Below, one piece after another: positions 23,501-53,672 of a DNA stretch of 64,000 nt; the first letter of the stretch is position 1; each line of letters begins with the position of its first letter. The stretch comes from Macrostomum lignano (lineage: Eukaryota), in assembly GCA_002269645.1 (NCBI GenBank), contig NIVC01001036.1, forward strand, positions 248,001 through 312,000. The letters run 5' to 3'. The position numbers were made by a program, and so were the translations under genes. The notes under the pieces were generated by a model that saw only the letters and a program-made list of their open reading frames with translations, made no database searches and was not told the origin of the DNA.

Positions 23501-26500
23501 TTTCATGACTATCTACCAGTGTTCACGCCTGTCTTTCATGACTATCTACCAGTGTTCACGCCTGTCTTTCATGACTATCTGTACCAGTGTTCACGCCTGT
23601 CTTTCATGACTATCTACCAGTGTTCACGCCTGTCTTTCATGACTATCTACCAGTGTTCACGCCTGTCTTTCATGACTATCTACCAGTGTTCACGCCTGTC
23701 TTTCATGACTATCTACCAGTGTTCACGCCTGTCTTTCATGACTATCTACCAGTGTTCACGCCTGTCTTTCATGACTATCTACCAGTGTTCACGCCTGTCT
23801 TTCATGACTATCTACCAGTGTTCACGCCTGTCTTTCATGACTATCTACCAGTGTTCACGCCTGTCTTTCATGACTATCTACCAGTGTTCACGCCTGTCTT
23901 TCATGACTATCTACCAGTGTTCACGCCTGTCTTTCATGACTATCTACCAGTGTTCACGCCTGTCTTTCATGACTATCTACCAGTGTTCACGCCTGTCTTT
24001 CATGACTATCTACCAGTGTTCACGCCTGTCTTTCATGACTATCTACCAGTGTTCACGCCTGTCTTTCATGACTATCTACCAGTGTTCACGCCTGTCTTTC
24101 ATGACTATCTACCAGTGTTCACGCCTGTCTTTCATGACTATCTACCAGTGTTCACGCCTGTCTTTCATGACTATCTACCAGTGTTCACGCCTGTCTTTCA
24201 TGACTATCTACCAGTGTTCACGCCTGTCTTTCATGACTATCTACCAGTGTTCACGCCTGTCTTTCATGACTATCTACCAGTGTTCACGCCTGTCTTTCAT
24301 GACTATCTACCAGTGTTCACGCCTGTCTTTCATGACTATCTACCAGTGTTCACGCCTGTCTTTCATGACTATCTACCAGTGTTCACGCCTGTCTTTCATG
24401 ACTATCTACCAGTGTTCACGCCTGTCTTTCATGACTATCTACCAGTGTTCACGCCTGTCTTTCATGACTATCTACCAGTGTTCACGCCTGTCTTTCATGA
24501 CTATCTACCAGTGTTCACGCCTGTCTTTCATGACTATCTACCAGTGTTCACGCCTGTCTTTCATGACTATCTACCAGTGTTCACGCCTGTCTTTCATGAC
24601 TATCTACCAGTGTTCACGCCTGTCTTTCATGACTATCTACCAGTGTTCACGCCTGTCTTTCATGACTATCTACCAGTGTTCACGCCTGTCTTTCATGACT
24701 ATCTACCAGTGTTCACGCCTGTCTTTCATGACTATCTACCAGTGTTCACGCCTGTCTTTCATGACTATCTACCAGTGTTCACGCCTGTCTTTCATGACTA
24801 TCTACCAGTGTTCACGCCTGTCTTTCATGACTATCTACCAGTGTTCACGCCTGTCTTTCATGACTATCTACCAGTGTTCACGCCTGTCTTTCATGACTAT
24901 CTACCAGTGTTCACGCCTGTCTTTCATGACTATCTACCAGTGTTCACGCCTGTCTTTCATGACTATCTACCAGTGTTCACGCCTGTCTTTCATGACTATC
25001 TACCAGTGTTCACGCCTGTCTTTCATGACTATCTACCAGTGTTCACGCCTGTCTTTCATGACTATCTACCAGTGTTCACGCCTGTCTTTCATGACTATCT
25101 ACCAGTGTTCACGCCTGTCTTTCATGACTATCTACCAGTGTTCACGCCTGTCTTTCATGACTATCTACCAGTGTTCACGCCTGTCTTTCATGACTATCTA
25201 CCAGTGTTCACGCCTGTCTTTCATGACTATCTACCAGTGTTCACGCCTGTCTTTCATGACTATCTACCAGTGTTCACGCCTGTCTTTCATGACTATCTAC
25301 CAGTGTTCACGCCTGTCTTTCATGACTATCTACCAGTGTTCACGCCTGTCTTTCATGACTATCTACCAGTGTTCACGCCTGTCTTTCATGACTATCTACC
25401 AGTGTTCACGCCTGTCTTTCATGACTATCTACCAGTGTTCACGCCTGTCTTTCATGACTATCTACCAGTGTTCACGCCTGTCTTTCATGACTATCTACCA
25501 GTGTTCACGCCTGTCTTTCATGACTATCTACCAGTGTTCACGCCTGTCTTTCATGACTATCTACCAGTGTTCACGCCTGTCTTTCATGACTATCTACCAG
25601 TGTTCACGCCTGTCTTTCATGACTATCTACCAGTGTTCACGCCTGTCTTTCATGACTATCTACCAGTGTTCACGCCTGTCTTTCATGACTATCTACCAGT
25701 GTTCACGCCTGTCTTTCATGACTATCTACCAGTGTTCACGCCTGTCTTTCATGACTATCTACCAGTGTTCACGCCTGTCTTTCATGACTATCTACCAGTG
25801 TTCACGCCTGTCTTTCATGACTATCTACCAGTGTTCACGCCTGTCTTTCATGACTATCTACCAGTGTTCACGCCTGTCTTTCATGACTATCTACCAGTGT
25901 TCACGCCTGTCTTTCATGACTATCTACCAGTGTTCACGCCTGTCTTTCATGACTATCTACCAGTGTTCACGCCTGTCTTTCATGACTATCTACCAGTGTT
26001 CACGCCTGTCTTTCATGACTATCTACCAGTGTTCACGCCTGTCTTTCATGACTATCTACCAGTGTTCACGCCTGTCTTTCATGACTATCTACCAGTGTTC
26101 ACGCCTGTCTTTCATGACTATCTACCAGTGTTCACGCCTGTCTTTCATGACTATCTACCAGTGTTCACGCCTGTCTTTCATGACTATCTACCAGTGTTCA
26201 CGCCTGTCTTTCATGACTATCTACCAGTGTTCACGCCTGTCTTTCATGACTATCTACCAGTGTTCACGCCTGTCTTTCATGACTATCTACCAGTGTTCAC
26301 GCCTGTCTTTCATGACTATCTACCAGTGTTCACGCCTGTCTTTCATGACTATCTACCAGTGTTCACGCCTGTCTTTCATGACTATCTACCAGTGTTCACG
26401 CCTGTCTTTCATGACTATCTACCAGTGTTCACGCCTGTCTTTCATGACTATCTACCAGTGTTCACGCCTGTCTTTCATGACTATCTACCAGTGTTCACGC

Positions 26501-29500
26501 CTGTCTTTCATGACTATCTACCAGTGTTCACGCCTGTCTTTCATGACTATCTACCAGTGTTCACGCCTGTCTTTCATGACTATCTACCAGTGTTCACGCC
26601 TGTCTTTCATGACTATCTACCAGTGTTCACGCCTGTCTTTCATGACTATCTACCAGTGTTCACGCCTGTCTTTCATGACTATCTACCAGTGTTCACGCCT
26701 GTCTTTCATGACTATCTACCAGTGTTCACGCCTGTCTTTCATGACTATCTACCAGTGTTCACGCCTGTCTTTCATGACTATCTACCAGTGTTCACGCCTG
26801 TCTTTCATGACTATCTACCAGTGTTCACGCCTGTCTTTCATGACTATCTACCAGTGTTCACGCCTGTCTTTCATGACTATCTACCAGTGTTCACGCCTGT
26901 CTTTCATGACTATCTACCAGTGTTCACGCCTGTCTTTCATGACTATCTACCAGTGTTCACGCCTGTCTTTCATGACTATCTACCAGTGTTCACGCCTGTC
27001 TTTCATGACTATCTACCAGTGTTCACGCCTGTCTTTCATGACTATCTACCAGTGTTCACGCCTGTCTTTCATGACTATCTACCAGTGTTCACGCCTGTCT
27101 TTCATGACTATCTACCAGTGTTCACGCCTGTCTTTCATGACTATCTACCAGTGTTCACGCCTGTCTTTCATGACTATCTACCAGTGTTCACGCCTGTCTT
27201 TCATGACTATCTACCAGTGTTCACGCCTGTCTTTCATGACTATCTACCAGTGTTCACGCCTGTCTTTCATGACTATCTACCAGTGTTCACGCCTGTCTTT
27301 CATGACTATCTACCAGTGTTCACGCCTGTCTTTCATGACTATCTACCAGTGTTCACGCCTGTCTTTCATGACTATCTACCAGTGTTCACGCCTGTCTTTC
27401 ATGACTATCTACCAGTGTTCACGCCTGTCTTTCATGACTATCTACCAGTGTTCACGCCTGTCTTTCATGACTATCTACCAGTGTTCACGCCTGTCTTTCA
27501 TGACTATCTACCAGTGTTCACGCCTGTCTTTCATGACTATCTACCAGTGTTCACGCCTGTCTTTCATGACTATCTACCAGTGTTCACGCCTGTCTTTCAT
27601 GACTATCTACCAGTGTTCACGCCTGTCTTTCATGACTATCTACCAGTGTTCACGCCTGTCTTTCATGACTATCTACCAGTGTTCACGCCTGTCTTTCATG
27701 ACTATCTACCAGTGTTCACGCCTGTCTTTCATGACTATCTACCAGTGTTCACGCCTGTCTTTCATGACTATCTACCAGTGTTCACGCCTGTCTTTCATGA
27801 CTATCTACCAGTGTTCACGCCTGTCTTTCATGACTATCTACCAGTGTTCACGCCTGTCTTTCATGACTATCTACCAGTGTTCACGCCTGTCTTTCATGAC
27901 TATCTACCAGTGTTCACGCCTGTCTTTCATGACTATCTACCAGTGTTCACGCCTGTCTTTCATGACTATCTACCAGTGTTCACGCCTGTCTTTCATGACT
28001 ATCTACCAGTGTTCACGCCTGTCTTTCATGACTATCTACCAGTGTTCACGCCTGTCTTTCATGACTATCTACCAGTGTTCACGCCTGTCTTTCATGACTA
28101 TCTACCAGTGTTCACGCCTGTCTTTCATGACTATCTACCAGTGTTCACGCCTGTCTTTCATGACTATCTACCAGTGTTCACGCCTGTCTTTCATGACTAT
28201 CTACCAGTGTTCACGCCTGTCTTTCATGACTATCTACCAGTGTTCACGCCTGTCTTTCATGACTATCTACCAGTGTTCACGCCTGTCTTTCATGACTATC
28301 TACCAGTGTTCACGCCTGTCTTTCATGACTATCTACCAGTGTTCACGCCTGTCTTTCATGACTATCTACCAGTGTTCACGCCTGTCTTTCATGACTATCT
28401 ACCAGTGTTCACGCCTGTCTTTCATGACTATCTACCAGTGTTCACGCCTGTCTTTCATGACTATCTACCAGTGTTCACGCCTGTCTTTCATGACTATCTA
28501 CCAGTGTTCACGCCTGTCTTTCATGACTATCTACCAGTGTTCACGCCTGTCTTTCATGACTATCTACCAGTGTTCACGCCTGTCTTTCATGACTATCTAC
28601 CAGTGTTCACGCCTGTCTTTCATGACTATCTACCAGTGTTCACGCCTGTCTTTCATGACTATCTACCAGTGTTCACGCCTGTCTTTCATGACTATCTACC
28701 AGTGTTCACGCCTGTCTTTCATGACTATCTACCAGTGTTCACGCCTGTCTTTCATGACTATCTACCAGTGTTCACGCCTGTCTTTCATGACTATCTACCA
28801 GTGTTCACGCCTGTCTTTCATGACTATCTACCAGTGTTCACGCCTGTCTTTCATGACTATCTACCAGTGTTCACGCCTGTCTTTCATGACTATCTACCAG
28901 TGTTCACGCCTGTCTTTCATGACTATCTACCAGTGTTCACGCCTGTCTTTCATGACTATCTGCCAGTGTTCACGCCTGTCTTTCATGACTATCTACCAGT
29001 GTTCACGCCTGTCTTTCATGACTATCTACCAGTGTTCACGCCTGTCTTTCATGACTATCTACCAGTGTTCACGCCTGTCTTTCATGACTATCTACCAGTG
29101 TTCACGCCTGTCTTTCATGACTATCTACCAGTGTTCACGCCTGTCTTTCATGACTATCTACCAGTGTTCACGCCTGTCTTTCATGACTATCTACCAGTGT
29201 TCACGCCTGTCTTTCATGACTATCTACCAGTGTTCACGCCTGTCTTTCATGACTATCTACCAGTGTTCACGCCTGTCTTTCATGACTATCTACCAGTGTT
29301 CACGCCTGTCTTTCATGACTATCTACCAGTGTTCACGCCTGTCTTTCATGACTATCTACCAGTGTTCACGCCTGTCTTTCATGACTATCTACCAGTGTTC
29401 ACGCCTGTCTTTCATGACTATCTACCAGTGTTCACGCCTGTCTTTCATGACTATCTACCAGTGTTCACGCCTGTCTTTCATGACTATCTACCAGTGTTCA

Positions 29501-30915
29501 CGCCTGTCTTTCATGACTATCTACCAGTGTTCACGCCTGTCTTTCATGACTATCTACCAGTGTTCACGCCTGTCTTTCATGACTATCTACCAGTGTTCAC
29601 GCCTGTCTTTCATGACTATCTACCAGTGTTCACGCCTGTCTTTCATGACTATCTACCAGTGTTCACGCCTGTCTTTCATGACTATCTACCAGTGTTCACG
29701 CCTGTCTTTCATGACTATCTACCAGTGTTCACGCCTGTCTTTCATGACTATCTACCAGTGTTCACGCCTGTCTTTCATGACTATCTACCAGTGTTCACGC
29801 CTGTCTTTCATGACTATCTACCAGTGTTCACGCCTGTCTTTCATGACTATCTACCAGTGTTCACGCCTGTCTTTCATGACTATCTACCAGTGTTCACGCC
29901 TGTCTTTCATGACTATCTACCAGTGTTCACGCCTGTCTTTCATGACTATCTACCAGTGTTCACGCCTGTCTTTCATGACTATCTACCAGTGTTCACGCCT
30001 GTCTTTCATGACTATCTACCAGTGTTCACGCCTGTCTTTCATGACTATCTACCAGTGTTCACGCCTGTCTTTCATGACTATCTACCAGTGTTCACGCCTG
30101 TCTTTCATGACTATCTACCAGTGTTCACGCCTGTCTTTCATGACTATCTACCAGTGTTCACGCCTGTCTTTCATGACTATCTACCAGTGTTCACGCCTGT
30201 CTTTCATGACTATCTACCAGTGTTCACGCCTGTCTTTCATGACTATCTACCAGTGTTCACGCCTGTCTTTCATGACTATCTACCAGTGTTCACGCCTGTC
30301 TTTCATGACTATCTACCAGTGTTCACGCCTGTCTTTCATGACTATCTACCAGTGTTCACGCCTGTCTTTCATGACTATCTACCAGTGTTCACGCCTGTCT
30401 TTCATGACTATCTACCAGTGTTCACGCCTGTCTTTCATGACTATCTACCAGTGTTCACGCCTGTCTTTCATGACTATCTACCAGTGTTCACGCCTGTCTT
30501 TCATGACTATCTACCAGTGTTCACGCCTGTCTTTCATGACTATCTACCAGTGTTCACGCCTGTCTTTCATGACTATCTACCAGTGTTCACGCCTGTCTTT
30601 CATGACTATCTACCAGTGTTCACGCCTGTCTTTCATGACTATCTACCAGTGTTCACGCCTGTCTTTCATGACTATCTACCAGTGTTCACGCCTGTCTTTC
30701 ATGACTATCTACCAGTGTTCACGCCTGTCTTTCATGACTATCTACCAGTGTTCACGCCTGTCTTTCATGACTATCTGTACCAGTGTTCACGCCTGTCTTT
30801 CATGACTATCTACCAGTGTTCACGCCTGTCTTTCATGAGTGTTCACGCCTATGACTATCTACCAGTGTTCACGCCTGTCTTTCATGACTATCTACCAGTG
30901 TTCACACGTGTCTTT
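20590..30915. repeat. 33-bp minisatellite (ACCAGTGTTCACGCCTGTCTTTCATGACTATCT), about 310 copies, filling ASPG intron 2
   Basis: Exact 33-bp period, with 35-bp (+GT) variants mostly near the left end. Confidence 0.99.
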
Positions 30916-30950
30916 CACAAGTCCCCTACAGTTAAAATTATGGCTCGCAC

Positions 30951-31676
30951 CTGATTGCACAGTGTATCGTGCACCCGGAATTTCCTAGTATGATCGGCTC
31001 CAAGCACCCGGTGCCAGTACACGTGCACATCAATGCCCAGCTTAGCCAACGGATTACAATTAGGCGAGGCGAATGCGTCAAAGTCGTTAGTTGAAATCTT
31101 CGTACACCGGTTGCCGCGCAACAACTCGTTATGAAAGAAGACGCAAACCTCGGGCACGCAGTAGAATCCAGCCAAGATTAATGCGCCTAGAAAGTTGTCG
31201 CGGCCATCGCTGCGGCATTCAATAATAGGAATCTGGGAGCCAGTGACAATAACCGGCTTGCCGAGATTCTCAAGCAGGAAGGACAGAGCCGAGGCTGTAT
31301 AGCACATCGTGTCCGTGCCGTGCAGTATGACAAAGCCGTCAAAGAAGTCGTACTCAAGGCCAATATCGGCCGCTATGCGCAGGTGATCGTCCATGGTCAT
31401 GTCGGACGAGTCTAGCAGCGGCTCGTACTCGTAGATGACGTACAACAGGGTCCGGTTGCCAACGCTAGTGGGCAGAGCGAATGGCAGGTCAACGGCGCCC
31501 AGACTGGTGTCAGTGGCGATCTCCCAATCGTCCTCGGTCATTAGGGAGCGCAGGCATTGGTTATCGTGCAATACCTTTGTGTGGCGAATAGCATCTCCCA
31601 GGTAATTGGCTACGGGTACGTAGGCGCCGTTCTCTGATTTCATACCGATTGTGCCGCCAGTGTACAGTACCAGGAC
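30951..31676 (-). CDS. ASPG: Asparaginase, exon 2 (catalytic N-domain)
   Basis: VLVLYTGGTIGM, HGTDTM, TGSQIP and RCTKISTNDFDAFASPN are type I L-asparaginase signatures. Acceptor CTCAG|GTC, donor CAG|GTGCGA, both phase 0. Confidence 0.95.
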
Positions 31677-32831: not shown

Positions 32832-35618
32832 CTGGTCTGTTCAGGCTTGGTAGCGTGTAGCGCATGCATTCATTTAATAAACTGCATAGACCATGTATAT
32901 CTCAGGACAATGTATAGCTTACCCTTTCTTGGAGATACTAACCTATTATAGTCAAATTGGATTGAAGCTTGGCCTAATTTGCCTTGCATTTGATATAATT
33001 TCCTTTCAAACTGTTATGGAACACAAGTACTAACCATAGCTAGTTCTGCTTAACTTGAAAGTCTAGTTGCAGATGCATGAAAATATTTAGAAAGCAAGCT
33101 TTTATCTTTGCTGACTCAAAATCTTTATCAATACTTGCTTTATCTTAACTGAAACATAGGCCTGAGAAATTAAAGGCTAAGTTCTAACTACTAGATTCTA
33201 TTTGTCTTTTTCAATATATTGCTTCTAGAATATAATCTTATAAGCAAGTAATAAATGAGAAAAGCATTTGATAGGACATAACATAAGAATTTGTTCATAA
33301 AAATAACTTATATGCTGAATAATAATAGAAAGTTGCTTTCAGACTAGCTTAATTTATAGATATAGAAATGAATATTGTCAAAAATATCAAAATACCTATA
33401 AAAATATATTTTTATTCATAGAGAAATATTTTTTAATATAAAAACTATACTTTCATTGGTCTATAGCCCTAATCTACTTGATTCCAATAGTTCTGTTTTA
33501 TGTTTTTCTAAATTAGGCCTATATATGTGCAATCCCTGTGATTTACACTGGCTATGCAATTTTCTTAAGTTTTTTTATACTTAGTTTTTTAATATATTGA
33601 ATTTCTACTAGCTTCCTAAAATAATATAATATTGTCATTGATACTTTAGGACAAACAATAATGAACTTTTAATATTTGGATAGATAGTTCAATTTGGCAC
33701 TAGTGCAGTTCTGTTCACAATTTTTTTCTTTTGAATTTGTGCCAGCTTCAATTATATTGTAGTGCCTTCAATTTAATATAATAGTATAATAGCAATAGCC
33801 AATAATAATATGCATAGGAATTATATGTAAAGTAAAGATAAACTCCTAGTCTCCTATTGTGTTTTTTATTTAGGGACTAACAAAGAATTGGTAAAGTCAA
33901 AGAGCAAATAAATAGCTTAACTTGAACTAAAAAAAGATGTAAATTTTATACCAAATTGGCTTAGAAAACACACAGTAAGCTGGCCTTAGTGGTCCAGCAA
34001 GCTATAGTATAGATTAGGCTTTCTAGCCTTTAGAAGGCAATAAAATCAAAATAATGCTAAAAATAGTTATGAATGGTTATGGCATTAATTATATGTTCTT
34101 CATTAGTGATTAGTGCTCAACTTTCAAGGTGCTATCAAATCAAATCTTAGTAGAGCTTTGTTTAGGCTACATTGATAAAATATTAAAAATGGCAGAATAA
34201 AACGCCATAATTATTTAACAGCAAACACTGAGCACAGTATGAAGTCAAGGAATACAACGTACAAGATCTGCTTTGTATAAAATTACAAATTAGGCAACAA
34301 ACCAAGGACATAGTTTCAGCGGTCGTCTGGTTAGCGGGGGTGTGTCTCTTCTTATTTTTTTACTTTTAACCATTTACTCTTCTTTTTTAGAGTTAAAAGC
34401 TATTTTTTATTTCCTATACTAGAGTTTTACGACGTTAAAAACGGTTTTCTATAGCTGAATGTTCGACTTTGTTATTACTTGCGCGAAATTTTGTAGCACT
34501 TTTTCAATTTTAGATTGACAATTTCTTTGGCCTCATTCGAACGGCCTGAGTCATGGTAAGCATTTATTCTAAAGTAATATTATATGTTGCTAACTATTAT
34601 TTTGTATTTAGGTAGCTTCCACCATCCAACAAATAGGAGCTTAACCTTCAAACCAAAGCGTCAATAGCAATGTTTAGAGATGAAAAATTTAAAGACCACG
34701 TAGACCAGTCCGACGAGCTCGGCTGTCTCGCCGGCAGGATGAACAATTGTCGAAAATTGTCAGAGATTGCAAACGAACCACACAAGTCCCATTATTCAGC
34801 GCACTTAATGTAGCACAGTACACCCCGCCCTGCTAAGATCTCGGATCTCGGAGTGAAACAGAGAGTTAATCTGGATTATTTCTGAACCGGACGTGAGCAA
34901 AAAGTACTTGTAGAAAGCAAAGTTTAAATTTAATTTATTTGATTTGATTTAAATACTTAGTTTAGGTAGCAAGGATTTAAAGAATGTTTTATACAGGTAA
35001 AAAATGCATTTAAGAGACTGCATAATCTTGGATATGAAGCACGATAATACATAAAATTATTTCCATCTGTATAACAGCTCAAAATGCCGTAAAAATAGAT
35101 TTTCTACTTAAAGTAGTATATTGTTATATACGAGCGTCAGTGGAAGTTGGAAGAACTGAAGGGCCACAGGTGCAACTGATATTGAGATTTGTTTTCTTAC
35201 CTACTCGTCCGTGTAGTGCATGCTTTTCGTTGCGCTGCCTTCAGCAAACCGTCCATTCAATTTAGAGTTTGGTGGGTCATGACCAGGTTAAAACTAAATT
35301 TACTTCAACCCTCTAGAGTATGATCGAGGGAAAATCTGCCAAAAGGTATGCCCATCAAATAGAAGAAGTTCGTGAACACCGTATGTTTACGTTGGGTGAT
35401 CATTCTACATTCGATCGATTCCGTTGGATTTGTATACTTTTACTGACTGCTGGGGCACACACATAGGCAAGCAGAAGTGCGATGTAATGCATTATAGTTT
35501 TTCTAACCTTGCTACAGCAGCAAAAAAGAGGAAAGTTTGAAGAGAGTTGCTGAAAATTATTATTATAGATAAAATCACATGTGCAAAACAGGTATTTATA
35601 CGTCGTACGAACGCAACC

Positions 35619-35837
35619 CACGGTTGGGCTGGAATAAGATTTCGGGGTAAAAAAATGCCCAATAAAACGACCACTGCAGTGTGATAGAGGAACATCTCAG
35701 CTGCTAGGGGAATATTTTCCTAAAATGAAATCGGTTTGTCCTGACCAGTTATGCCTAATTATGTTAATTAGCTAGCATAATTAATTTATGTACTCGAAAT
35801 TAGCCGCTTCCTTCGTGTGAAACCGCCCAAAAACTGC
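35619..35837 (+). repeat. Left terminal inverted repeat
   Basis: CACGGTTGGGCTGGAATAAG...AAAAACTGC; reverse complement of 38857-39075. Confidence 0.96.
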
Positions 35838-36202
35838 CCTTATGGCCTGGTCTGCTTTTATGTTTTTATGATATAAACTGCTATTATACTGGATGAGCAG
35901 TTGCTAATCAGAATGTATGCAGCAGCCAATGCTCTGCTCTAGCTTCAATATGAACTGTTGTGCTCTAGGTCTCACGCACTCTCTTTGCTCAATATCGAAA
36001 TTAGCACATGAACGTACGTACGTTCGTACTGTTCTATTTCATATGCGTCGGACTGTCAGATGTACATTGATTATTGCAACTTTCATAGCCAACTCATATC
36101 AGCACTCAAATAAATATCACAACCAATACTCAAGTCAAGGCCAAATTCAAAACATTTGTCTCTTGCATCAGTGGCCAGCGATCAATTTCAGAATTTCAGA
36201 AT

Positions 36203-38245
36203 ATGCCGAATGCAAAAAAATCACATGAGGAGTGCAGAGAGAGTCTGTGTTTGCTCTGTTTGCGGAAAGCCTCGCGCTCAATTTGGTCGGTAGCCAATTT
36301 TTCTGCTGAGGATTTGGTGCCGAATTTCGCCTCTGTACAGCACATTCTGCCGACCGGCTTGTGTGACGGGTGTCGACGCATCATTTCATCTCTATCTGGT
36401 CCAGCGCCTCGTGAGTTGCCACCAAGGCTAAACTATGAGCAGATGGTTGCCGACCTGCAGAGTCTGCCTCCGTCCACAAGAAATAATCCGCATTGCTCTT
36501 GCGAACTGTGCGAGCTTGCCAGATCGAAGAACAGCAGCAAGTTGACAACTTCTGTCAGCTCTTACAGTACTGGCGCTGCTGCATCTCGTCCAGGACGACC
36601 TCGAAAACATCCATTGTCGGCAGCTGATGCAGCACAACCACAGTTCATTTGCTCGTTTTGTCGATCAGAAATTGGCCGTGGCAAGAAACACAACTGCTCA
36701 AGAGCAACGCGACTGACTAATCTGCAGCAGGGTGTCAGTCCTGATACGCAGGACATGCTGGCCAGCAGCTGCATATCAACAAAGGCTGCAGCAAGTGGCT
36801 CCAGCTGTGTTTCCTTGTCACGGATGGAAGGTGGTCGCCCAATGCGCGTGACTGTTGGTGCTAGTGTGGGCAATGGAGCAACCAGCTTCCCTGCAACTTC
36901 TATCAGCACAATGAAGACACTGAAAGGTGTGCTGAATCTTAGCAACAATCAGACGCTGCAGGTCGCGCAGGTACTGAGAGCTGGTGCAAGCTCTTCGCGA
37001 GCAGTTGAATCTAGGCTGAAAGATTCATTAGTGACTCAGAATCGTGTATTGGAAGACTTTTTTAAACTTAAGACACTTCAATTCGAGCTGTCATCTTCTG
37101 CCATTGGTGATCGTGCTGCTGTCCTCTGCACTGATGCTTCGCGCCTCATTGAATTTATTGTCCAACAGCGAGGAGCCTCTAACTTCGAATGCCGGCTGGG
37201 GCTTGATGGTGGCGGAGGTTTTTTTAAGATTTGCGTGTCTGTCGTTGCGTCCACGTCTGACCATCAGGTGCACGGCGGTGCTGCTGCAGTTCACGAAAGT
37301 GTGCGACGCCACTCACAGTTCAATGACGCCGGAGTGAAAAAAATTATAGTTCTCGCAATCGTCAACGACATCTCAGAAACGTACAAAAATGTAAAAACAC
37401 TGCTACAGGCTGTTTCTGTGGTAGAGCTGTCTGCTGTGACTGTCACAGACATGAAGCTAGCAAACATTCTCTGCGGACTCCAGCCTCACTCGTGTGCTCA
37501 CCCATGTCCGTACTGCGAGTCTACTGCACCACTGACGACAAGCGGCAGGCCACGAACCCTCGGTAGAATTCGGCAGAAAGTGCAGGAGTTCAATTCTGCT
37601 GGACGAGTTTGGAGCAGAGCGAAGCAGTTCATGAACTGTGTCAATCTGCCGCTGCTGGCTGGTGATGATGACGAGGAAGTGCTGATGCTGCTGCCCCCTC
37701 CTGAACTGCATCTTCTGCTCGGAATCAGTAACAAATTGCTTGATTCTTTGAACGAAGCTTGGGGCGAAGACCGCGGATTTGCATGGCTACAATCTCACGG
37801 CATCGTGCGAGCGGGGTACCGCGGCGGCACAATGGAAGGCAACGCTTGTCGCAAATTGCTGCTGATGGCTGAGGTTCTTCTTGAAGACGTTCCTCATGAA
37901 CTACAGCCCTTCGCCCAGTGCTTGATTTGCTTCAACAGCGTTGTTAATGGAGCATTTGGCCAGGAATTGGTCCCGGATTTTGGTGAGCGAATCGAAAATT
38001 TTGGAGCTGCATACCTGGCACTGGGATTGACTGTCACGCCCAAAGTGCATGTTCTCCTTTGCCACGTGAGCGACTTCTGCCATCGCACTGGTCGTGCACT
38101 TGGAACTTGTAGCGAACAGGCAGTAGAGAGCGCACACTCGGATTTCCAGCGGACTTGGCAGCGCTACAGGCTGCCAGCCGATCACCCACAGTTCGGCAAT
38201 AGGCTGCTGCAGGCAACAGTGGCGTATAACAGCTGGCATATCTAA
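36203..38245 (+). CDS. 680-aa DDE transposase, Chapaev/Transib/RAG1-like
   Basis: N-terminal H-x7-CxxC...CxxC...HCxCxxC zinc finger; AT-hook GRPRK; CxxC..HxC finger. Putative catalytic D335 (LGLDGG), D416 (TDMKL) and E642 (SEQAVESAH). Zn ligands C435/C438 and H616-x4-H621; MEGNACRKLL motif. Confidence 0.9.
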   Translation: MPNAKKSHEECRESLCLLCLRKASRSIWSVANFSAEDLVPNFASVQHILPTGLCDGCRRIISSLSGPAPRELPPRLNYEQMVADLQSLPPSTRNNPHCSCELCELARSKNSSKLTTSVSSYSTGAAASRPGRPRKHPLSAADAAQPQFICSFCRSEIGRGKKHNCSRATRLTNLQQGVSPDTQDMLASSCISTKAAASGSSCVSLSRMEGGRPMRVTVGASVGNGATSFPATSISTMKTLKGVLNLSNNQTLQVAQVLRAGASSSRAVESRLKDSLVTQNRVLEDFFKLKTLQFELSSSAIGDRAAVLCTDASRLIEFIVQQRGASNFECRLGLDGGGGFFKICVSVVASTSDHQVHGGAAAVHESVRRHSQFNDAGVKKIIVLAIVNDISETYKNVKTLLQAVSVVELSAVTVTDMKLANILCGLQPHSCAHPCPYCESTAPLTTSGRPRTLGRIRQKVQEFNSAGRVWSRAKQFMNCVNLPLLAGDDDEEVLMLLPPPELHLLLGISNKLLDSLNEAWGEDRGFAWLQSHGIVRAGYRGGTMEGNACRKLLLMAEVLLEDVPHELQPFAQCLICFNSVVNGAFGQELVPDFGERIENFGAAYLALGLTVTPKVHVLLCHVSDFCHRTGRALGTCSEQAVESAHSDFQRTWQRYRLPADHPQFGNRLLQATVAYNSWHI

Positions 38246-38856
38246 TGCAGTGACATATTTAATGCGGTGATGGCTTTTCATTTGACTAAATTTACTGTCG
38301 TGTTGTGCAGCCTACTTTGCTGCATGCTGTTGTTACCAGCACTACTACATGGATGAAGAAAAACAGTATAATAGGAGCAATACTTCCATGACAATTTGTG
38401 AAGGGATCTATCTAAAAGTTCAACATCCAAAAGTTTGAATATTGATTCTATTGGCAATGGAAGTAATTCAAAAGAAATATTCAATATCTAAAAAAACTTT
38501 TGACCCAGACTTTTCTGCTCAGATTAGCAATATTCTCTTCTTTATCTGTGACATGTATCTCGTAGTACCTGCATGCTAAAACATAAACTGATCATGAATT
38601 GCTATATAAGTTATATTATAATTATATCATATATTTAATTTTATTGATATAAATTTTAATAGGTGCTATCCAAATGTCCAACCTGCTGCTCAGTTTTGAA
38701 GAGACCCTTTCTCTGAAACGCAGGATATTTCTATTTTTTTCTTTAATTTTTGAGTACTAATAATATGAACTACAAAGTGCTCACTTTCTATAACTAATAC
38801 TAATATATATTGATATTAAATAGCTACAGATTTTAATGCGAACACAGCTCATAAAA

Positions 38857-39075
38857 GCAGTTTTTAGGCGATTTCACATGAAGGAAGCGGCTAATTTCGA
38901 GTACATAAATTAATTATGCTAGCTAATTAACATAATTAGGCATAACTGGTCAGGACAAACCGATTTCATTTTAGGAAAATATTCCCCTAGCAGCTGAGGT
39001 GTTCCTCTATCACACTGCAGTGGTCGTTTTATTGGGCATTTTTTTACCCCGAAATCTTATTCCAGCCCAACCGTG
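38857..39075 (-). repeat. Right terminal inverted repeat
   Basis: GCAGTTTTTAGGCG...CCAGCCCAACCGTG; reverse complement of the left TIR. Confidence 0.96.
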
Positions 39076-39489
39076 AACCGTGCTATGATGGATAGCATAG
39101 CATAGTCAGAAGGTCAGTAGGGAGAGATGTGTCAGAATGGAAAAGGATATAGCGAGTCGCTAGAGTACGCGCGCGAGCACAGATACTACTGCAATGACTA
39201 TGGAAAGAAGTCGCTCTGTGCCCCAGCGCGTGACTGACAAAGTAAATGAAGCGAGTTTCGTACTGCGCCTGATGTATATCGGACTTCTGCATGAACACAA
39301 ACCAGATTCCCTAGCTAACAGAAAATAAGTTAAAAATACGAGCTACATGTCCGAAAAAAATTGCCATTCGGTTTGGCTATAATTCAAACTGCCACCTAAT
39401 TTTCTTTGTAATGCAGCTTAAAAAATTACGCAGGGTAATTTTTTTACCTTCTTTACCTTCTCTACAGGCTTTTCTCTACAAGTTAGCCC

Positions 39490-40755: not shown

Positions 40756-42333
40756 CTAGATGAGGCAGATGCTGCTCCAGATGATGGCGCTAGCAGCTGC
40801 AGCTGGGGCTGCGGCGGCGGCGGCGGCGGCGGCGCGGCGGCGGCGGCGGCGGCGCGGCGGCGGCGGTACGGGAGTATGGTGAAGCCGCCGCTGCCACTGC
40901 CTGCCGCTGTCTCTAGAGCCGGACGCCCAGATCTCTGGGATCGCCTGATCGCAGCTGCAATCTTCATCCCAGTGCTGTGACTGGCGAGCGCCGCCGCCAA
41001 AAACGACAGCAACTTCGTCGCCCGTCGAGTCAACTCGCTGATGTCGGGCCGTAGCGGACAGCAGAGGAGGCGGCGGCGGTGGCGGCAGCGGCGGCTGTGA
41101 AAACGATTCCCGCTGCCGATCCAGGTGCCTTCGACTTCGGCCGCTGCTTTCATCTCCTCGGTGCAGCCAGAAGAAGCAACAGCCGCGCTGCCTGTGGCAG
41201 CATCGGCAGAGACGCAGTGGCAGCCGGCCGAAGTCGCCATCGAATATCAGCAGCGCCAGCGGCTCAACGGCCGCCCTGGAGAAGCCGAGAATGGTGAGAA
41301 ACTTGTACAGCTCGACGGTGACACGGTACTGCGGGTCCATCAGGATCAGGGCGTACAGCGGATACCAGCAGATGAGATGCAGACACCACAGCCCGGCCAG
41401 CACCCTCTGCCGGTTGTACTTCGCCGATGCCAGCTGTCCGAGGCGCCTGGCGAAGCTCTCAACCGGCTGATCGGGCGGCTGGCTGGCGTCGCCGGCGCGG
41501 GCCTTGTAGAAGGCCAGCTTGGCGCCGATGGTGCGTCCGATGGTTCGGCGGAACACGGCCAGATAGTAGGCGGCCGCCATCAGCGCCAGGGACACGATCA
41601 GCACCCACATTGTGTACACAACGTAGTTCTTCACCTGGCCGTACACGAACAGGCATTTCTCGCCGCTCCTGCTGCTACTGGACGAGCGGGCGCCGGCGCC
41701 GGCGCCAACCACGCCGCGGCCAGTTGAAGCTTCGAAATTGGCACCGATGAGGGTCGGGCCGAGGTGCAGGATGGCGCTGCCAGTGTACACCAGCGACACG
41801 CCAAATAACACGCAGCAGACGGAGCCCTCCGGTTGGCGGCCCTCGGACGCCTGCCGACTATCAAAGAAGTACACCTCGCAGCAGGCCATGGCGACCAGAT
41901 TGAAGGCCGCCGTTGTCATCAGCACGATGTAGCTGGTGCCCAGCGAGTTGCAAGCGCTGCTGGACACGCCGCCGCCGTCAGAGACGAGGCCCCGGCCGAA
42001 CGGCAGGCAGTAGGCGGACATCGCCAGGTTGAGCAGCGCTGAGTGCCCTACGAACGCCGAGGAGAGTCGCCGGGTGCGCGGCCGGACCAGCAGGGAGGCC
42101 ATCAGCAGCGAGTTGGCGATGAGCCCGACTCCGGCGATGGCGAACATGGCGGCCTGCTCGAAGGCCTCGTGCAGCGAGTCGTCCTCGCCGTGCTGGTGCT
42201 CGTCCGGCCAGCCGGTGTCGCCTGGACCGGTCTGCATGAGCTGCCTTCGCGACCGGGTTGGCTGGGACTGCACGGGCGTGAGGATCTGGAGGGTCGGTGG
42301 ATGGCTTTCGTTAGTGTCTAGTGATGCCTGCAT
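40756..42333 (-). CDS. Orphan class A (rhodopsin-like) GPCR, single coding exon (start codon uncertain)
   Basis: Seven hydrophobic segments; TM1 GxxxN (GLIANSLL); Cys at the top of TM3 (ACNSLG) and in ECL2 (CLF); TM6 CWxP (ICWYPLY). DRY and NPxxY are replaced by EVY and EPLAL. Confidence 0.85.
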   Translation of the reverse strand: MQASLDTNESHPPTLQILTPVQSQPTRSRRQLMQTGPGDTGWPDEHQHGEDDSLHEAFEQAAMFAIAGVGLIANSLLMASLLVRPRTRRLSSAFVGHSALLNLAMSAYCLPFGRGLVSDGGGVSSSACNSLGTSYIVLMTTAAFNLVAMACCEVYFFDSRQASEGRQPEGSVCCVLFGVSLVYTGSAILHLGPTLIGANFEASTGRGVVGAGAGARSSSSSRSGEKCLFVYGQVKNYVVYTMWVLIVSLALMAAAYYLAVFRRTIGRTIGAKLAFYKARAGDASQPPDQPVESFARRLGQLASAKYNRQRVLAGLWCLHLICWYPLYALILMDPQYRVTVELYKFLTILGFSRAAVEPLALLIFDGDFGRLPLRLCRCCHRQRGCCFFWLHRGDESSGRSRRHLDRQRESFSQPPLPPPPPPPLLSATARHQRVDSTGDEVAVVFGGGARQSQHWDEDCSCDQAIPEIWASGSRDSGRQWQRRLHHTPVPPPPRRRRRRRAAAAAAAAAPAAAASAIIWSSICLI

Positions 42334-46664: not shown

Positions 46665-48188
46665 GTGCTCATGGCCAGCCGCATTCTCAGCTTGTTTAAC
46701 TGCGCCGGAGACAGCAGCACAGGAGACGGCAAGCGGCCCCTCCATCGGAAGAAGAAGAAGAAAAGAAGCGACAGAGCCGGAGGTAAAAGACCGGTGGGCA
46801 ACCCGGACTCGCCGGAAGAGTCCTACAGATTTGCCGCGGCCGCAGTACCGCAGCTTGGCGACGTAGCGGACGGAGACGGCGGCGACGGCGACGGTCTCGG
46901 CTGGCGCACCTTCAACTACCTGTGCGACAAGGAGCAGAGCAGCGGCGGCTACAGCCTGGCCCAGGTGCACTTCGCCAGCCGCAGGCCGCTGCGGGCCCGT
47001 CGTCAGTTCGGCGCCGAGACCGAATTCTGGTGCTCCTTCGCTGGCAAGCAGCGGCAGCTCGAGGCCCGTCTGGTATGTCTGCGGCCGGACTGCGGACTCC
47101 GGAGCGGCCAGCAGCAGCCGACCAGGTGTCCGACGTCAGTCATCGCCATCTCCCCGATCGGGCGGCACCAAGCCCGCTGCCGCAACCTGGAATCCACGCA
47201 TGGCCAGCTGCTCCTCCAGCTGGGCCGCCAGCTGTTCCACGCGCCGCTGCTAGCCAGGCCGCGCGAGGCCACCCGCCTGATGACCGACTGCGCTGCCTTC
47301 TGCATCGCCCAGCAGAGGCTGCTGTTTGCCGTCTCCTCCGACTTTAGCTTGCTGAAGTGCGCGCCGCTCCAGCGTCTGGCCATTGACGGAGCTTCAGCAG
47401 CTCGACAGCGGCTGATTTGGCGCCGCAGCTGGCGGCTGAAATCCCTCCTGCTGGCTGCCGGCTCAGCGGCAGAAACGGCGGCCGACGACGACTTTGACGA
47501 CTTAAACGACGACGATGAACAAGACTCAGGAGGTTCCGACGACAACGACGGCGACGGCGACGAAGATGACGACGAAGAGGAAAACGGTGTCGCCGAGGGT
47601 CCGGCGGGTTGCCACACGCTGGCGCACTGGCAGGCCGGCCACAGACTTTTCCTGGCCTCCAGACGCCGCGTCTGGGCGGTGGACGTCTCCGACGCCGGCT
47701 TCGATGAGGAGGATGACGATGATGATGAGGCGGAGACAGACGATGAGGCCGAGCAGCTGGACGGGACGCGCTGGGTTCCGCAACCGGCAGACGCCCGGTG
47801 CGCATTCAGCCTGCCTTCCAAGCCGGGCTCGAGCTTCCGCCGCGTCACCGACCTGGCCGTCGATCCGCGCGGCCTGCTGTTTGTCTGCGACGCCGGCGCC
47901 AACCGGGTGCTCGTCTTCGACGCCCGCAACGGCAGCCGCCTGGCCGAGCTGGGCGGGCGCGAGTTCCGACCGGACGTGCTGCTGATGAAGCACCTGCTGC
48001 CCGAGGAGGGCCCCGGCTCCGCCTACCGCCGGCCGGGCCGGCTGCGCAAGTCAAGCGGTGTCTGCGCCTATCAGCGCGACGCCGGCTGCGGCAGCCGCGC
48101 CTTCCTGCTGCTGGTCACCGGCGGCTTTGGCTGCGCCGGCCAGACGTTCGACGTGACGGGACTCCGGCCGGGATCGGCACAGTGCTGA
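46665..48188 (+). CDS. NHL-repeat-like/beta-propeller protein with acidic tracts, single exon
   Basis: 507-aa GC-rich ORF; NHL-type segment FRRVTDLAVDPRGLLFVCDAGANRVLVFD; basic KKKKKR stretch; two Asp/Glu-rich tracts. Confidence 0.72.
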   Translation: MLMASRILSLFNCAGDSSTGDGKRPLHRKKKKKRSDRAGGKRPVGNPDSPEESYRFAAAAVPQLGDVADGDGGDGDGLGWRTFNYLCDKEQSSGGYSLAQVHFASRRPLRARRQFGAETEFWCSFAGKQRQLEARLVCLRPDCGLRSGQQQPTRCPTSVIAISPIGRHQARCRNLESTHGQLLLQLGRQLFHAPLLARPREATRLMTDCAAFCIAQQRLLFAVSSDFSLLKCAPLQRLAIDGASAARQRLIWRRSWRLKSLLLAAGSAAETAADDDFDDLNDDDEQDSGGSDDNDGDGDEDDDEEENGVAEGPAGCHTLAHWQAGHRLFLASRRRVWAVDVSDAGFDEEDDDDDEAETDDEAEQLDGTRWVPQPADARCAFSLPSKPGSSFRRVTDLAVDPRGLLFVCDAGANRVLVFDARNGSRLAELGGREFRPDVLLMKHLLPEEGPGSAYRRPGRLRKSSGVCAYQRDAGCGSRAFLLLVTGGFGCAGQTFDVTGLRPGSAQC

Positions 48189-51032: not shown

Positions 51033-53030
<1,998 letters not shown>

Positions 53031-53672
53031 GGATGATCGATAGATATTCCAGCTGGCAGCTAATGATGATGAGGCCACAGAAGGAACTCAGACTGACTCA
53101 CCCCCGCTCCCTTCTCTCTCTCAATCGCAGCCTTCCAAATTAGTTCGCCCAGCTCCATCGCCCCTGATTACCCTATGCCGAGAAATAGAGTCCAAAAAGC
53201 GACTGCAAATTGCGGCAGAAATCTCCCCCCCCCCAGCTAAGACGGGCCGATTAGGCCAGGCGCACTCACCCCAGAGCTGGCTGTGTTGGGCAGGACAAAT
53301 AGATGCGCCGGCTGGGCAGAGCTCTCTCTGCTACCAAAAAATATCATTGAAGCCCTGGCCGCTGGCTGCAGTGGCTATCTATATTGCTTGGCAGTCAAAC
53401 TGCTTCTAGAGGCTAATAACGTCGGAGCTCGTCTCTGATTGGACAAATGCGTAGAGCGGATGATTGGCCATCAATTCCTAAGAGAAAACTCATAATCATA
53501 CTACTGTTAGTATATTTGCACACGACTTAGGTAGGTAAGTTCAAATATACGGCTGCTAAGTCAATTCTGCTAATTGCTATTAACTAAATTATTAACTAAA
53601 AGCTTAGTGACGAAAATTGAGCCTCTTTAATATGATACCTCTACTCATGCTCATGCTGCTCAGTGTGTCTTA

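What the first reader, a model, noticed from the sequence alone, without database searches (positions are those of the whole stretch)
35615..39079. Apparently intact, young RAG1-like (Chapaev-type) DNA transposon
Seen: 219-bp TIRs with only 4 mismatches, CAC...GTG ends, a perfect 4-bp TSD (AACC) and one uninterrupted 680-aa ORF. The core parallels RAG1 motif by motif: LGLDGG (D335, cf. RAG1 D600), TDMKL..GL..S..HPCPYC (cf. YDEKL..GL..S...CTLC, D708 and C727/C730), PELHLLLG (cf. DALHCDIG), MEGNACRKLL (cf. MNGNFARKLM), HVLLCH (cf. H937-x4-H942) and SEQAVESAHSDFQR (cf. SEGNESGNKLFRR, E962). Established, from memory: 4-bp TSDs, CAC/GTG ends and D-x(60-80)-D-x(220-290)-E spacing (here x80 and x225) define Chapaev elements, whose N-termini resemble RAG1. 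Inference: a potentially active autonomous copy that could be a new family in the RAG1/Transib/Chapaev radiation. No RAG2-like ORF is visible.
Basis: partly seen in the sequence, partly recalled or inferred. Interest (0 to 1): 0.85.

Follow-up and report, generated by a model that had tools for sequence, protein, structure and literature searches.

The report
Young Chapaev transposon in a flatworm
This is a real, intact and very recently copied "cut-and-paste" jumping gene of the known Chapaev group in the flatworm Macrostomum lignano. Its enzyme has the same fold as RAG1, the protein that assembles antibody genes, so it is a good but not unprecedented candidate for studying that enzyme family.

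Summary
The element is 3,457 bp (35619-39075). It has 231-nt TIRs (97% identical; 219 nt with 4 mismatches), CAC...GTG ends, an AACC 4-bp TSD and one 680-aa ORF.

The host is Macrostomum lignano. Four further copies encode the identical protein, differ by 1-12 nt, and sit in unrelated flanks. Three of those four have their own perfect 4-bp TSD. A second family (56% aa identity) also makes a 4-bp TSD.

An AlphaFold model (pLDDT 80.6) hits only RAG1 (E about 1e-11) and then HzTransib in the PDB. Profile alignments place D416, C435/C438, H616/H621 and E642 on RAG1 D708, C727/C730, H937/H942 and E962.

The family is far closer to a published Chapaev3 transposase (hhalign E 1.3e-21) than to RAG1 (E 4e-4). 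It meets the published Chapaev hallmarks: 3-4 bp TSD, CAC/GTG termini, and C(2)C, LH and H(4)H motifs. It does not fit Chapaev3 (TWA TSD), Transib (5 bp) or CACTA. The N-terminus has a Chapa/NZD-like two-zinc ligand pattern.

Verdict: a new, probably active member of a known kind. The RAG1-like motifs are real, but the whole CMC/Transib clade shares them. Interest is moderate.

The parts
35615..35618 (.). Left copy of the 4-bp target-site duplication (AACC)
   Evidence: The other copies have ATCT, TTGC and CTCG, and the second family has GAGC.
35619..35849 (+). Left terminal inverted repeat, 231 nt, starting CACGGTTGGGCTGG
   Evidence: The window copy carries 4 private T>C changes at 35823, 35828, 35838 and 35839.
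35619..35632 (+). Terminal 14-nt box (CAC-heptamer region), 13 of 14 nt conserved in the second M. lignano family. Inferred cleavage and recognition site.
35649..35659 (+). A-tract box AAAAAAATGCC at TIR nt 31-41, conserved in the second family although the intervening spacer has diverged. Inferred second transposase contact, possibly for the AT-hook.
   Evidence: Only two families were compared, so the function is inference.
36203..38245 (+). Single-exon transposase gene, 680 aa, with a RAG1/Transib-fold DDE enzyme of the Chapaev group
36203..36532 (+). N-terminal two-zinc domain (aa 1-110). Invariant ligands: C16, C19, C54, C57 (ZAD-like C4) and H8 with C98, C100, C103. This is a Chapa/NZD-like type I ligand pattern.
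   Evidence: Invariant columns. zf-AD Pfam hits in 6 of 17 relatives. Profile against the PDB ZAD entry 7po9, E 0.041. Model pLDDT 84.5. Ligand scheme compared with preprint 10.64898/2026.01.24.700457.
36593..36604 (+). GRPR AT-hook-like motif (aa 131-134) in a disordered linker. GRP is the family consensus.
   Evidence: DNA binding is inferred.
36650..36697 (+). Small C2HC zinc knuckle (C150, C153, H163, C165), at least 90% conserved
37205..37207 (+). Codon of D335, the first catalytic Asp, on predicted strand beta-1 (LGLDGGGG). Invariant in 69 sequences.
   Evidence: Aligned to the D of LFIDSS in Garfield_BM. Equivalence to RAG1 D600 (SCDGMGD) rests on the fold match and the motif, not on a printed alignment.
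37448..37450 (+). Codon of D416, the second catalytic Asp. Invariant. Aligned to RAG1 D708.
37505..37516 (+). C435-x2-C438, the C(2)C zinc ligands. Aligned to RAG1 C727/C730.
38048..38065 (+). H616-x4-H621, the H(4)H zinc ligands. Aligned to RAG1 H937/H942.
38126..38128 (+). Codon of E642, the catalytic Glu. Aligned to RAG1 E962.
38845..39075 (-). Right terminal inverted repeat, ending ...CCAGCCCAACCGTG
39076..39079 (.). Right copy of the 4-bp target-site duplication (AACC)

Best explanation
The feature is a full-length autonomous cut-and-paste DNA transposon of the Chapaev group (CMC/'CMCT' clade, which some authors place in the Transib superfamily). It lies in the genome of the flatworm Macrostomum lignano and belongs to a family that amplified very recently and is probably still mobile.

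Shown here:
- Its single 680-aa protein has, from N to C: a two-zinc Chapa/ZAD-like domain, an AT-hook-like GRPR linker, a small C2HC knuckle, and a RAG1/Transib-fold catalytic core.
- The core carries the triad D335, D416 and E642.
- It also carries a structural zinc site formed by C435/C438 and H616/H621.

Inferred by analogy with RAG1 and HzTransib:
- A transposase dimer binds the two identical ends. It uses the conserved terminal CAC-containing 14 nt and possibly the A-tract box about 30 nt inside.
- It nicks at the CAC boundary.
- It releases the element, probably through hairpins on the flanking DNA.
- It inserts the 3'-OH ends into target DNA with a 4-bp stagger and no strong sequence preference. 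That stagger produces the 4-bp duplications.

There is no RAG2-like partner.
For: Structure of the element: TIRs, CAC/GTG ends, AACC TSD and an intact ORF.

Transposition:
- Five copies in assembly GCA_002269645.1 encode the identical protein in unrelated flanks. Their TSDs are ATCT, TTGC, AACC and CTCG, plus one imperfect pair, TATA/AATA.
- Pairwise differences are 1-12 nt, and all 15 variable sites are singletons.
- A second M. lignano family (56% aa identity) has a GAGC TSD and the same terminal 14-mer.

Fold: AF2 model with pLDDT 80.6. Foldseek against the PDB gives 34 RAG1 chains at E 1e-11 to 1e-8, then HzTransib at 4e-7 to 2e-5, then noise.

Sequence:
- The 69-sequence profile hits BbRAG1L at 1.4e-4 and zebrafish RAG1 at 1.3e-3, with catalytic and zinc residues in register.
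- hhalign against the verified mouse RAG1 core gives E 4e-4.
- hhalign against the published Chapaev3 transposase Garfield_BM gives E 1.3e-21, probability 99.4%, 351 columns covering all three catalytic residues. BLASTP gives 7e-15.
- D335, D416, C435, C438 and H503 are invariant. H616, H621 and E642 are at least 90% conserved.

Literature hallmarks of Chapaev: 3-4 bp TSD, CAC...GTG termini, and C(2)C, LH and H(4)H motifs (PMC4079192). Chapaev carries an N-terminal Chapa zinc domain and has been placed in the Transib superfamily (PMC4411706).

The family is large: 3,463 cluster representatives at E<=1e-3.
Against: - No reference sequence of Chapaev sensu stricto (for example Chapaev-1/2_BF from Repbase) could be obtained. 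Placement inside Chapaev proper, rather than as a sister lineage, rests on the TSD length, the termini, the N-terminal ligand pattern and homology to Chapaev3.
- The PDB holds no CACTA or Mirage transposase, so the fold search cannot discriminate within the CMC clade.
- Pfam has no model that hits this protein.
- The N-terminal domain is not significantly similar to the mouse RAG1 NZD (hhalign E 0.11) or to any solved structure (best ZAD hit E 0.37).
- One of the five copies has an imperfect TSD.
- Mobility, hairpin chemistry and the roles of the TIR boxes are untested.
- The five copies were found by exact protein identity, so the apparent absence of coding changes is partly a selection effect.
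Confidence: 0.88

Rival explanations
1. It represents a separate, so far unnamed lineage of the CMC/Transib ('CMCT') clade. That lineage would be sister to Chapaev and Chapaev3 rather than a member, and only converges with Chapaev on 4-bp TSDs and CAC ends.
For: It shares only 24% identity with the one reference Chapaev3 transposase available. The N-terminal domain differs from that of Garfield_BM (one search aligns only from residue 167 of Garfield). No Pfam model hits it. The family is large and unnamed.
Against: Every published Chapaev hallmark is met. The N-terminal ligand pattern fits the type I Chapa domain described for Chapaev. hhalign probability against Chapaev3 is 99.4%. Chapaev proper is known to be distant from Chapaev3 (PMC4411706).
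Confidence: 0.08
2. It is a Chapaev3 element.
For: The only reference transposase that could be compared is a Chapaev3 (Garfield_BM), and it matches strongly.
Against: All Chapaev3 elements examined in the literature make 3-bp TWA TSDs and insert between A and T (PMC4079192, PMC3014272). Here the TSDs are 4 bp: AACC, ATCT, TTGC, CTCG and GAGC. Identity is low (24%) and the N-terminus differs.
Confidence: 0.02
3. It is a canonical Transib or a RAG-like (ProtoRAG/TransibSU) transposon, on the direct line to RAG1.
For: The best structural matches are RAG1 and then HzTransib. The best PDB sequence match is amphioxus RAG1L.
Against: Transib and RAG-like elements make 5-bp TSDs (PMC4411706). Canonical Transib lacks an N-terminal zinc domain. 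There is no RAG2-like ORF. Similarity to RAG1 (E 4e-4) is about 17 orders of magnitude weaker than to Chapaev3. The TIRs are symmetric, with no 12/23 asymmetry.
Confidence: 0.01
4. It is structurally intact but no longer mobile. It may be silenced by piRNAs or carry a subtle inactivating change inherited from the master copy, so the 'potentially active' claim fails even though the identity is right.
For: No evidence of current mobility was available: no polymorphism data, transcripts or empty sites. M. lignano has an active piRNA system against transposons (PMC4604429, title and abstract only).
Against: Five copies are 99.65-99.97% identical with an uninterrupted ORF, all catalytic and zinc residues are intact, and the TIRs are near-perfect. 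A dead family would accumulate disabling mutations at random.
Confidence: 0.3

Closest known systems
Chapaev DNA transposons (Kapitonov & Jurka 2007; CMC-Chapaev in RepeatMasker/Dfam; a clade of the Transib superfamily in Kapitonov & Koonin 2015)
   Same: 4-bp TSD. Invariable 5'-CAC...GTG-3' termini. Single transposase ORF with a DDE triad and C(2)C, LH and H(4)H motifs. N-terminal two-zinc domain with one N-terminal and three C-terminal ZFb ligands (type I Chapa pattern). Animal host.
   Different: Not compared directly with any Chapaev-1/2 reference sequence. The TIRs are unusually long (231 nt). An extra C2HC knuckle follows the Chapa-like domain, and there is no RING finger. As far as the searchable literature shows, this is the first such family described in Macrostomum.
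Chapaev3 families Garfield, Merrow and Conan (Zhang et al. 2014, PMC4079192)
   Same: Clearly homologous catalytic core (hhalign E 1.3e-21). The same order of D, D, C(2)C, LH, H(4)H and E. CAC termini.
   Different: Chapaev3 makes 3-bp TWA TSDs with an A...T context, while this element makes 4-bp TSDs with no consensus. Identity is only 24%. The N-terminal region is different. The protein is longer (680 vs 485-561 aa).
RAG1 / RAG1L (V(D)J recombinase and ProtoRAG transposase) and HzTransib
   Same: The same overall fold over about 570 residues. The same catalytic triad positions (D708 and E962 aligned). The same C2/H2 structural zinc site. LH and GN motifs. A GRPR AT-hook-like motif upstream of the core, as at the start of the RAG1 nonamer-binding domain. 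A CAC at the cleaved end, as in the RSS heptamer.
   Different: 11-14% identity. 4-bp rather than 5-bp TSD. No RAG2 partner. Symmetric long TIRs instead of 12/23 signals. No RING finger. It is a selfish element, not a host recombinase.
EnSpm/CACTA and Mirage transposons
   Same: Members of the same CMC clade, sharing the C(2)C and H(3-4)H motifs and CA...TG ends (PMC12730594).
   Different: CACTA makes 3-bp TSDs, has CACTA termini and is usually a large multi-gene element. Mirage makes 2-bp TSDs. Neither has a Chapa domain.

Membership tests
Chapaev (CMC clade) | Target-site duplication of 3-4 bp (4 bp for Chapaev proper) | tested here: met
   Perfect 4-bp TSDs at 4 of 5 copies (AACC, ATCT, TTGC, CTCG) and 1 of 1 in the second family (GAGC). 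One copy is imperfect, TATA/AATA. Definition from PMC4079192.
Chapaev (CMC clade) | TIRs with invariable 5'-CAC ... GTG-3' termini | tested here: met
   CACGGTTGGG...CCCAACCGTG in all five copies, and CACGGTTAGG... in the second family.
Chapaev (CMC clade) | [quoted passage not shown] | tested here: met
   D335, D416, C435-x2-C438, L502-H503, H616-x4-H621 and E642, all invariant or at least 90% conserved in 69 sequences.
Chapaev (CMC clade) | Significant sequence homology to a reference Chapaev-group transposase | tested here: met
   hhalign A3 vs Garfield_BM (Chapaev3, sequence from the supplement of PMC4079192): probability 99.4%, E 1.3e-21, 351 columns. BLASTP 7e-15. No Chapaev-1/2 reference was available.
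Chapaev (CMC clade) | N-terminal Chapa domain: ZFa (C4) plus ZFb built from N- and C-terminal ligands | tested here: inconclusive
   The ligand pattern fits type I: H8-x7-C16-x2-C19 ... C54-x2-C57 ... C98-x-C100-x2-C103. Compare mouse NZD: H102-x7-C110-x2-C113 ... C175-x2-C178 ... H206-x3-C210-x2-C213. The ZFa part hits ZAD (Pfam zf-AD in 6 of 17 relatives; PDB 7po9 E 0.041). However, hhalign against the mouse NZD gives E 0.11, and Foldseek of the domain model finds nothing below E 0.37.
Chapaev (CMC clade) | Phylogenetic placement within the Chapaev clade of DDE cores | not testable with these tools
   Repbase and RepeatPeps reference sets are not available here.
Chapaev3 | 3-bp TWA TSD, inserted between A and T | tested here: not met
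   The TSDs are 4 bp and GC-containing. Definition.
Transib (canonical) | 5-bp TSD | tested here: not met
   4-bp TSDs. Definition from PMC4411706 and 10.64898/2026.08.26.747230.
Transib (canonical) | Transposase consists of the core only, with no NZD/Chapa-like N-terminal domain | tested here: not met
   A conserved two-zinc N-terminal domain is present. Definition.
Transib / RAG1 structural superfamily | RAG1/Transib fold of the catalytic core with a C2-H2 zinc site | tested here: met
   Foldseek: RAG1 at E 1e-11 and HzTransib at 4e-7, probability 1.0, about 570 columns, TM 0.45-0.58. Residues in register.
RAG-like transposon (ProtoRAG / TransibSU) | A RAG2-like gene next to the RAG1-like gene inside the element | tested here: not met
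   There is only one ORF with homologues in the 3,457-bp element.
RAG-like transposon (ProtoRAG / TransibSU) | Asymmetric heptamer-spacer-nonamer ends (12/23-like) | tested here: not met
   The two ends are 97% identical over 231 nt, so both have the same spacing. An A-tract lies 23 nt after the terminal 7 nt at both ends.
EnSpm/CACTA | CACTA termini and 3-bp TSD | tested here: not met
   The termini are CACGG and the TSD is 4 bp.

The most novel reading that the evidence does not exclude
The ends of this Chapaev element may carry an RSS-like bipartite signal: a terminal CAC-heptamer region, a spacer of about 23 nt that is free to vary, and an A-rich 'nonamer-like' box. That box could be read by the GRPR AT-hook region that sits where the RAG1 nonamer-binding domain begins.

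If so, the heptamer/spacer/nonamer grammar and its AT-hook reader, together with the NZD/Chapa domain, would predate the Chapaev-Transib/RAG split. This near-identical multi-copy family, in a flatworm where transgenesis already works, would be the first experimentally tractable active Chapaev on which to test that.
Probability: 0.15. Interest if true: 0.7.

Novelty: new member of a known kind. Interest (0 to 1): 0.4.

Why it matters
Chapaev is the only transposon lineage that consistently keeps an N-terminal zinc domain resembling the RAG1/RAG1L NZD. A 2026 preprint (10.64898/2026.01.24.700457) states that no experimental work exists on Chapaev transposases or their Chapa domain.

This family has an intact ORF, near-perfect ends and at least five copies that are 99.65-99.97% identical. 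It is therefore a practical starting point for three experiments:
- testing whether the Chapaev branch uses RAG/Transib-type hairpin chemistry;
- finding out what the Chapa domain does;
- finding out how a 4-bp rather than a 5-bp stagger is set.

The host, M. lignano, is the flatworm with established transgenesis, so an endogenous active cut-and-paste element matters there both as a tool and as a source of instability. None of this changes the current picture of RAG evolution. It adds a well-preserved specimen.

Tried and rejected
- Pfam scan of the protein itself: no hit at E<=10. phmmer against the PDB: no hit.
- A second word-index search with the 69-sequence alignment returned only proteins already known. 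It produced no names and no new taxa.
- Cluster look-ups gave no organism or product names for the relatives.
- I tried to recover complete ends and TSDs from distant relatives on short public contigs (L007-L012). The TIRs run off the contig ends (L007, L008, L010, L011). L009 has no long inverted repeat. The inverted repeat in L012 abuts an Illumina adapter. None of these was usable.
- The N-terminal domain was modelled alone and searched against the PDB. Nothing was significant: ZAD ranked first at E 0.37, followed by nuclear-receptor zinc modules.
- hhalign of the N-terminal profile against the verified mouse RAG1 NZD sequence was not significant (E 0.11, 22 columns).
- Considered and rejected: segmental duplication as the source of the five copies, because the flanks share no similarity at E<=1e-10; a domesticated host gene, because of the TIRs, TSDs and multiple copies; the 103-aa ORF at 35917-36228 as a second element gene, because it has no family hit and overlaps the start of the transposase ORF.
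- No searchable paper links M. lignano to Chapaev.


Full report
**Observation**

The window holds a 3,457-bp element at 35619-39075.
- Its inverted-repeat arms are 35619-35849 and 38845-39075: 231 nt, 97% complementary. In the pairwise alignment the first 219 nt contain exactly four mismatches.
- The ends read CACGGTTGGG...CCCAACCGTG and are flanked by AACC on both sides (35615-35618 and 39076-39079).
The spacing D335-x80-D416-x225-E642 is correct.
- The terminal 14-mer occurs nowhere else in the window (expected 0.05 by chance).

**Host and copies**

The protein is identical to one encoded at five places in the Macrostomum lignano assembly GCA_002269645.1, and 99% and 56% identical to two annotated M. 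lignano hypothetical proteins. One of the five loci (L003, NIVC01001036.1) is the window itself.

All five copies are 3,457 bp and differ pairwise at 1-12 positions. All 15 variable sites are singletons, which is the star-like pattern of a recent burst. Their flanks share no similarity, so they are independent insertions and not duplicated segments or redundant haplotigs.

The flanking tetranucleotides are ATCT/ATCT, TTGC/TTGC, AACC/AACC, CTCG/CTCG and TATA/AATA. The 56%-identical family (L006) has 126-nt TIRs beginning CACGGTTAGGCTGG and a GAGC/GAGC duplication. A 4-bp TSD without an obvious consensus is therefore a property of these elements.

**What the protein is**

On its own the protein hits nothing in Pfam or in PDB sequences. 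A full HMMER scan of 1.84 billion cluster representatives found 3,463 relatives at E<=1e-3 and 460 at E<=1e-30, so it belongs to a large, unnamed family.

In a 69-sequence alignment (A3):
- D335, D416, C435, C438 and H503 are invariant.
- H616, H621, E638 and E642 are at least 90% conserved.
- In the N-terminus, C16, C19, C54, C98, C100 and C103 are invariant. H8, C57, C150, C153, H163 and C165 are at least 90% conserved.

An AlphaFold2 model built on the 17-sequence alignment A2 has mean pLDDT 80.6, and above 90 over most of residues 380-680. Foldseek against the PDB returns 34 RAG1 chains first (E 1.1e-11 to 1e-8, probability 1.0, 553-676 alignment columns, about 570 in most hits, TM 0.42-0.58). 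HzTransib chains follow (4.3e-7 to 2.3e-5). Nothing else is below E 0.1, and the Hermes hAT transposase scores 0.28.

At the sequence level:
- The A2 profile already picked HzTransib as the best PDB match, over the H(4)H-to-E region (E 0.1).
- The deeper A3 profile hits amphioxus RAG1L (6b40, E 1.4e-4), zebrafish RAG1 (1.3e-3) and mouse RAG1 (about 0.01).
- I confirmed the mouse RAG1 core sequence and numbering against PDB chains. hhalign of A3 against it gives E 4e-4 over 228 columns.

In these alignments D416 pairs with D708, C435/C438 with C727/C730, L502-H503 with the LH of DALHCDIG, the GN of MEGNACRKLL with MNGNFARKL, H616/H621 with H937/H942, and E642 with E962. The first Asp is not covered by the RAG1 sequence alignments. 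However:
- D335 lies on the predicted first strand of the RNase-H-like unit: strands at 328-337, 340-349 and 381-388, a helix at 394-404, a strand at 412-414, then D416.
- Its motif LDGGGG resembles RAG1 CDGMGD around D600 (numbering verified).
- It aligns with the first Asp of a Chapaev3 transposase.

**Which family**

The literature gives the hallmarks of Chapaev as a 3-4 bp TSD, invariable CAC...GTG termini, a DDE triad and the motifs C(2)C, LH and H(4)H (PMC4079192). Chapaev3 elements instead make 3-bp TWA duplications. Canonical Transib and RAG-like elements make 5-bp duplications. Kapitonov and Koonin place Chapaev and Chapaev3 as clades of the Transib superfamily and describe their N-terminal 'Chapa' zinc domain (PMC4411706). 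Kojima notes that C(2)C and H(3-4)H are shared by EnSpm, Mirage, Chapaev, Transib and RAG1 (PMC12730594).

This element meets every Chapaev hallmark and fails the TSD criterion of Chapaev3, Transib and CACTA.

As a direct test I took the published Garfield_BM (Chapaev3) transposase from the supplement of PMC4079192. hhalign of A3 against it gives probability 99.4%, E 1.3e-21 and 351 aligned columns, covering all three catalytic residues and all motifs. BLASTP gives 7e-15 at 24% identity. The family is therefore about 17 orders of magnitude closer to a bona fide Chapaev-group enzyme than to RAG1. The remaining gap is that no Chapaev-1/2 reference sequence was available.

**N-terminal region**

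The first 110 residues model confidently as a small helical zinc domain (pLDDT 84.5). In the N-terminal alignment A4 the ligands H8, C16, C19, C54, C98, C100 and C103 are invariant and C57 is at least 90% conserved.

They form the pattern H8-x7-C16-x2-C19 ... C54-x2-C57 ... C98-x-C100-x2-C103. The NMR study of the mouse RAG1 NZD reports ZFa = C110, C113, C175, C178 and ZFb = H102, H206, C210, C213. It describes type I Chapa domains as using one N-terminal and three C-terminal ZFb ligands, with ZFa resembling ZAD (preprint 10.64898/2026.01.24.700457). The pattern here fits that description, including the identical H-x7-C-x2-C spacing.

Support for the ZFa part:
- Six of 17 relatives hit Pfam zf-AD (best E 6.8e-8).
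- The N-terminal profile's best PDB match is a Drosophila ZAD domain (7po9, E 0.041).

Direct tests are not significant. hhalign against the verified mouse NZD sequence gives E 0.11, and Foldseek of the domain model has ZAD first at only E 0.37. I therefore score the Chapa-domain criterion as inconclusive but consistent.

Downstream lie a GRPR AT-hook-like motif (aa 131-134; GRP is the family consensus) in a disordered linker, and a conserved C2HC knuckle (aa 150-165).

**Ends**

Between the two M. lignano families, TIR positions 1-14 (13 of 14 identical) and a box A6-7(T)TGCC at about nt 30-41 are conserved. The sequence between them and nearly everything beyond nt 45 has diverged.

Read as terminal 7 nt, 22-23 nt spacer and an A-rich box, this recalls an RSS, and the protein has an AT-hook where the RAG1 nonamer-binding domain starts. 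That is a lead from two families only. Both ends of each element are the same, so there is no 12/23 asymmetry.

**Mechanism**

Shown:
- an intact DDE enzyme of the RAG1/Transib fold, with its structural zinc site;
- near-identical ends;
- independent insertions with 4-bp duplications.

Inferred from RAG1 and HzTransib:
- nicking at the CAC boundary;
- hairpin formation on flanking DNA;
- release of blunt element ends;
- strand transfer with a 4-bp stagger.

No RAG2-like cofactor is encoded.

**Context**

The element is intergenic, in a region crowded with minisatellite arrays. This fits the reported 15% simple and tandem repeat content of this genome (PMC5730564). Nearby host ORFs include a rhodopsin-type GPCR, an NHL-repeat protein and a BBS2 exon.

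**Novelty and verdict**

Chapaev has been known since 2007, and its kinship with Transib and RAG1 has been published. What is new is the specimen: a Macrostomum family not found in the searchable literature, apparently intact and very young.

One caveat applies: the RAG1 motif parallels are clade-wide rather than special to this element.

I rate it a new member of a known kind, with interest 0.4. Its value is as a tractable candidate for the first functional study of a Chapaev transposase and its Chapa domain.

Noticed in passing
window 13118-18038, 20601-30838, 51029-53046 and more than 20 other arrays: The window is packed with minisatellite and microsatellite arrays. Examples: a 33-bp unit in about 310 copies (10.2 kb, 99% matches), a 35-bp unit in about 141 copies, and ATAG in about 507 copies. 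The 33-bp array produces spurious ORFs of 2,455-2,648 aa (22859-30805, 23587-30954).
   Followed up: partly
window 40756-42333 (-), 46665-48188 (+), 54534-55412 (-): Host coding sequences near the element: a rhodopsin-family 7TM receptor ORF (Pfam 7tm_1, E 1.5e-7), an ORF with an NHL repeat, and an exon encoding the BBS2 platform, hairpin and GAE domains (E 1e-22). The transposon lies about 1.7 kb from the GPCR ORF.
   Followed up: partly
window 35823, 35828, 35838, 35839 (left TIR) and 38722: The window copy differs from the other four copies by five private changes. Four of them are T>C within 17 bp of the left TIR. A cluster like that looks like a single event (a repair or conversion tract, editing-like change, or assembly error) rather than independent mutations.
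   Followed up: no
window 35673-35682 (TIR nt 55-64) and L006 about 3543-3556: Both M. lignano families carry a short palindrome of the form CAC...GTG about 52-65 nt inside each end: CACTGCAGTG here and GGCACCTATGTGCC in the second family. The surrounding sequence has diverged. It may be an internal transposase site or a hairpin.
   Followed up: no
L012:3360-3434 (ENA ERZ27295729, contig k141_1214982): A public metagenome contig that carries a 35%-identical relative ends in an Illumina Nextera adapter sequence. The assembly therefore contains unclipped adapter, and the inverted repeat next to it is not a genuine transposon end.
   Followed up: partly
P0010 and P0018 (M. lignano and metaclust proteins): Two database proteins fuse a 49-50%-identical Chapaev-like segment to a Peptidase_M16 or a ubiquitin-conjugating (UQ_con) domain. 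These are probably gene-model chimeras across insertions of further Chapaev families in M. lignano. Less likely, they are real host-transposase fusions.
   Followed up: no
L007:5495-6193: The contig carrying the 37%-identical relative P0004 also encodes a DDE_Tnp_IS1595 (Merlin/ISXO2-like) transposase fragment and long CAG/CAA-rich repeats. That host genome is also rich in transposons.
   Followed up: no
relatives P0009 and one other member of alignment A2: Two family members hit Pfam DUF1280 (best E 1.7e-6). DUF1280 may therefore be derived from Chapaev-type transposases.
   Followed up: no
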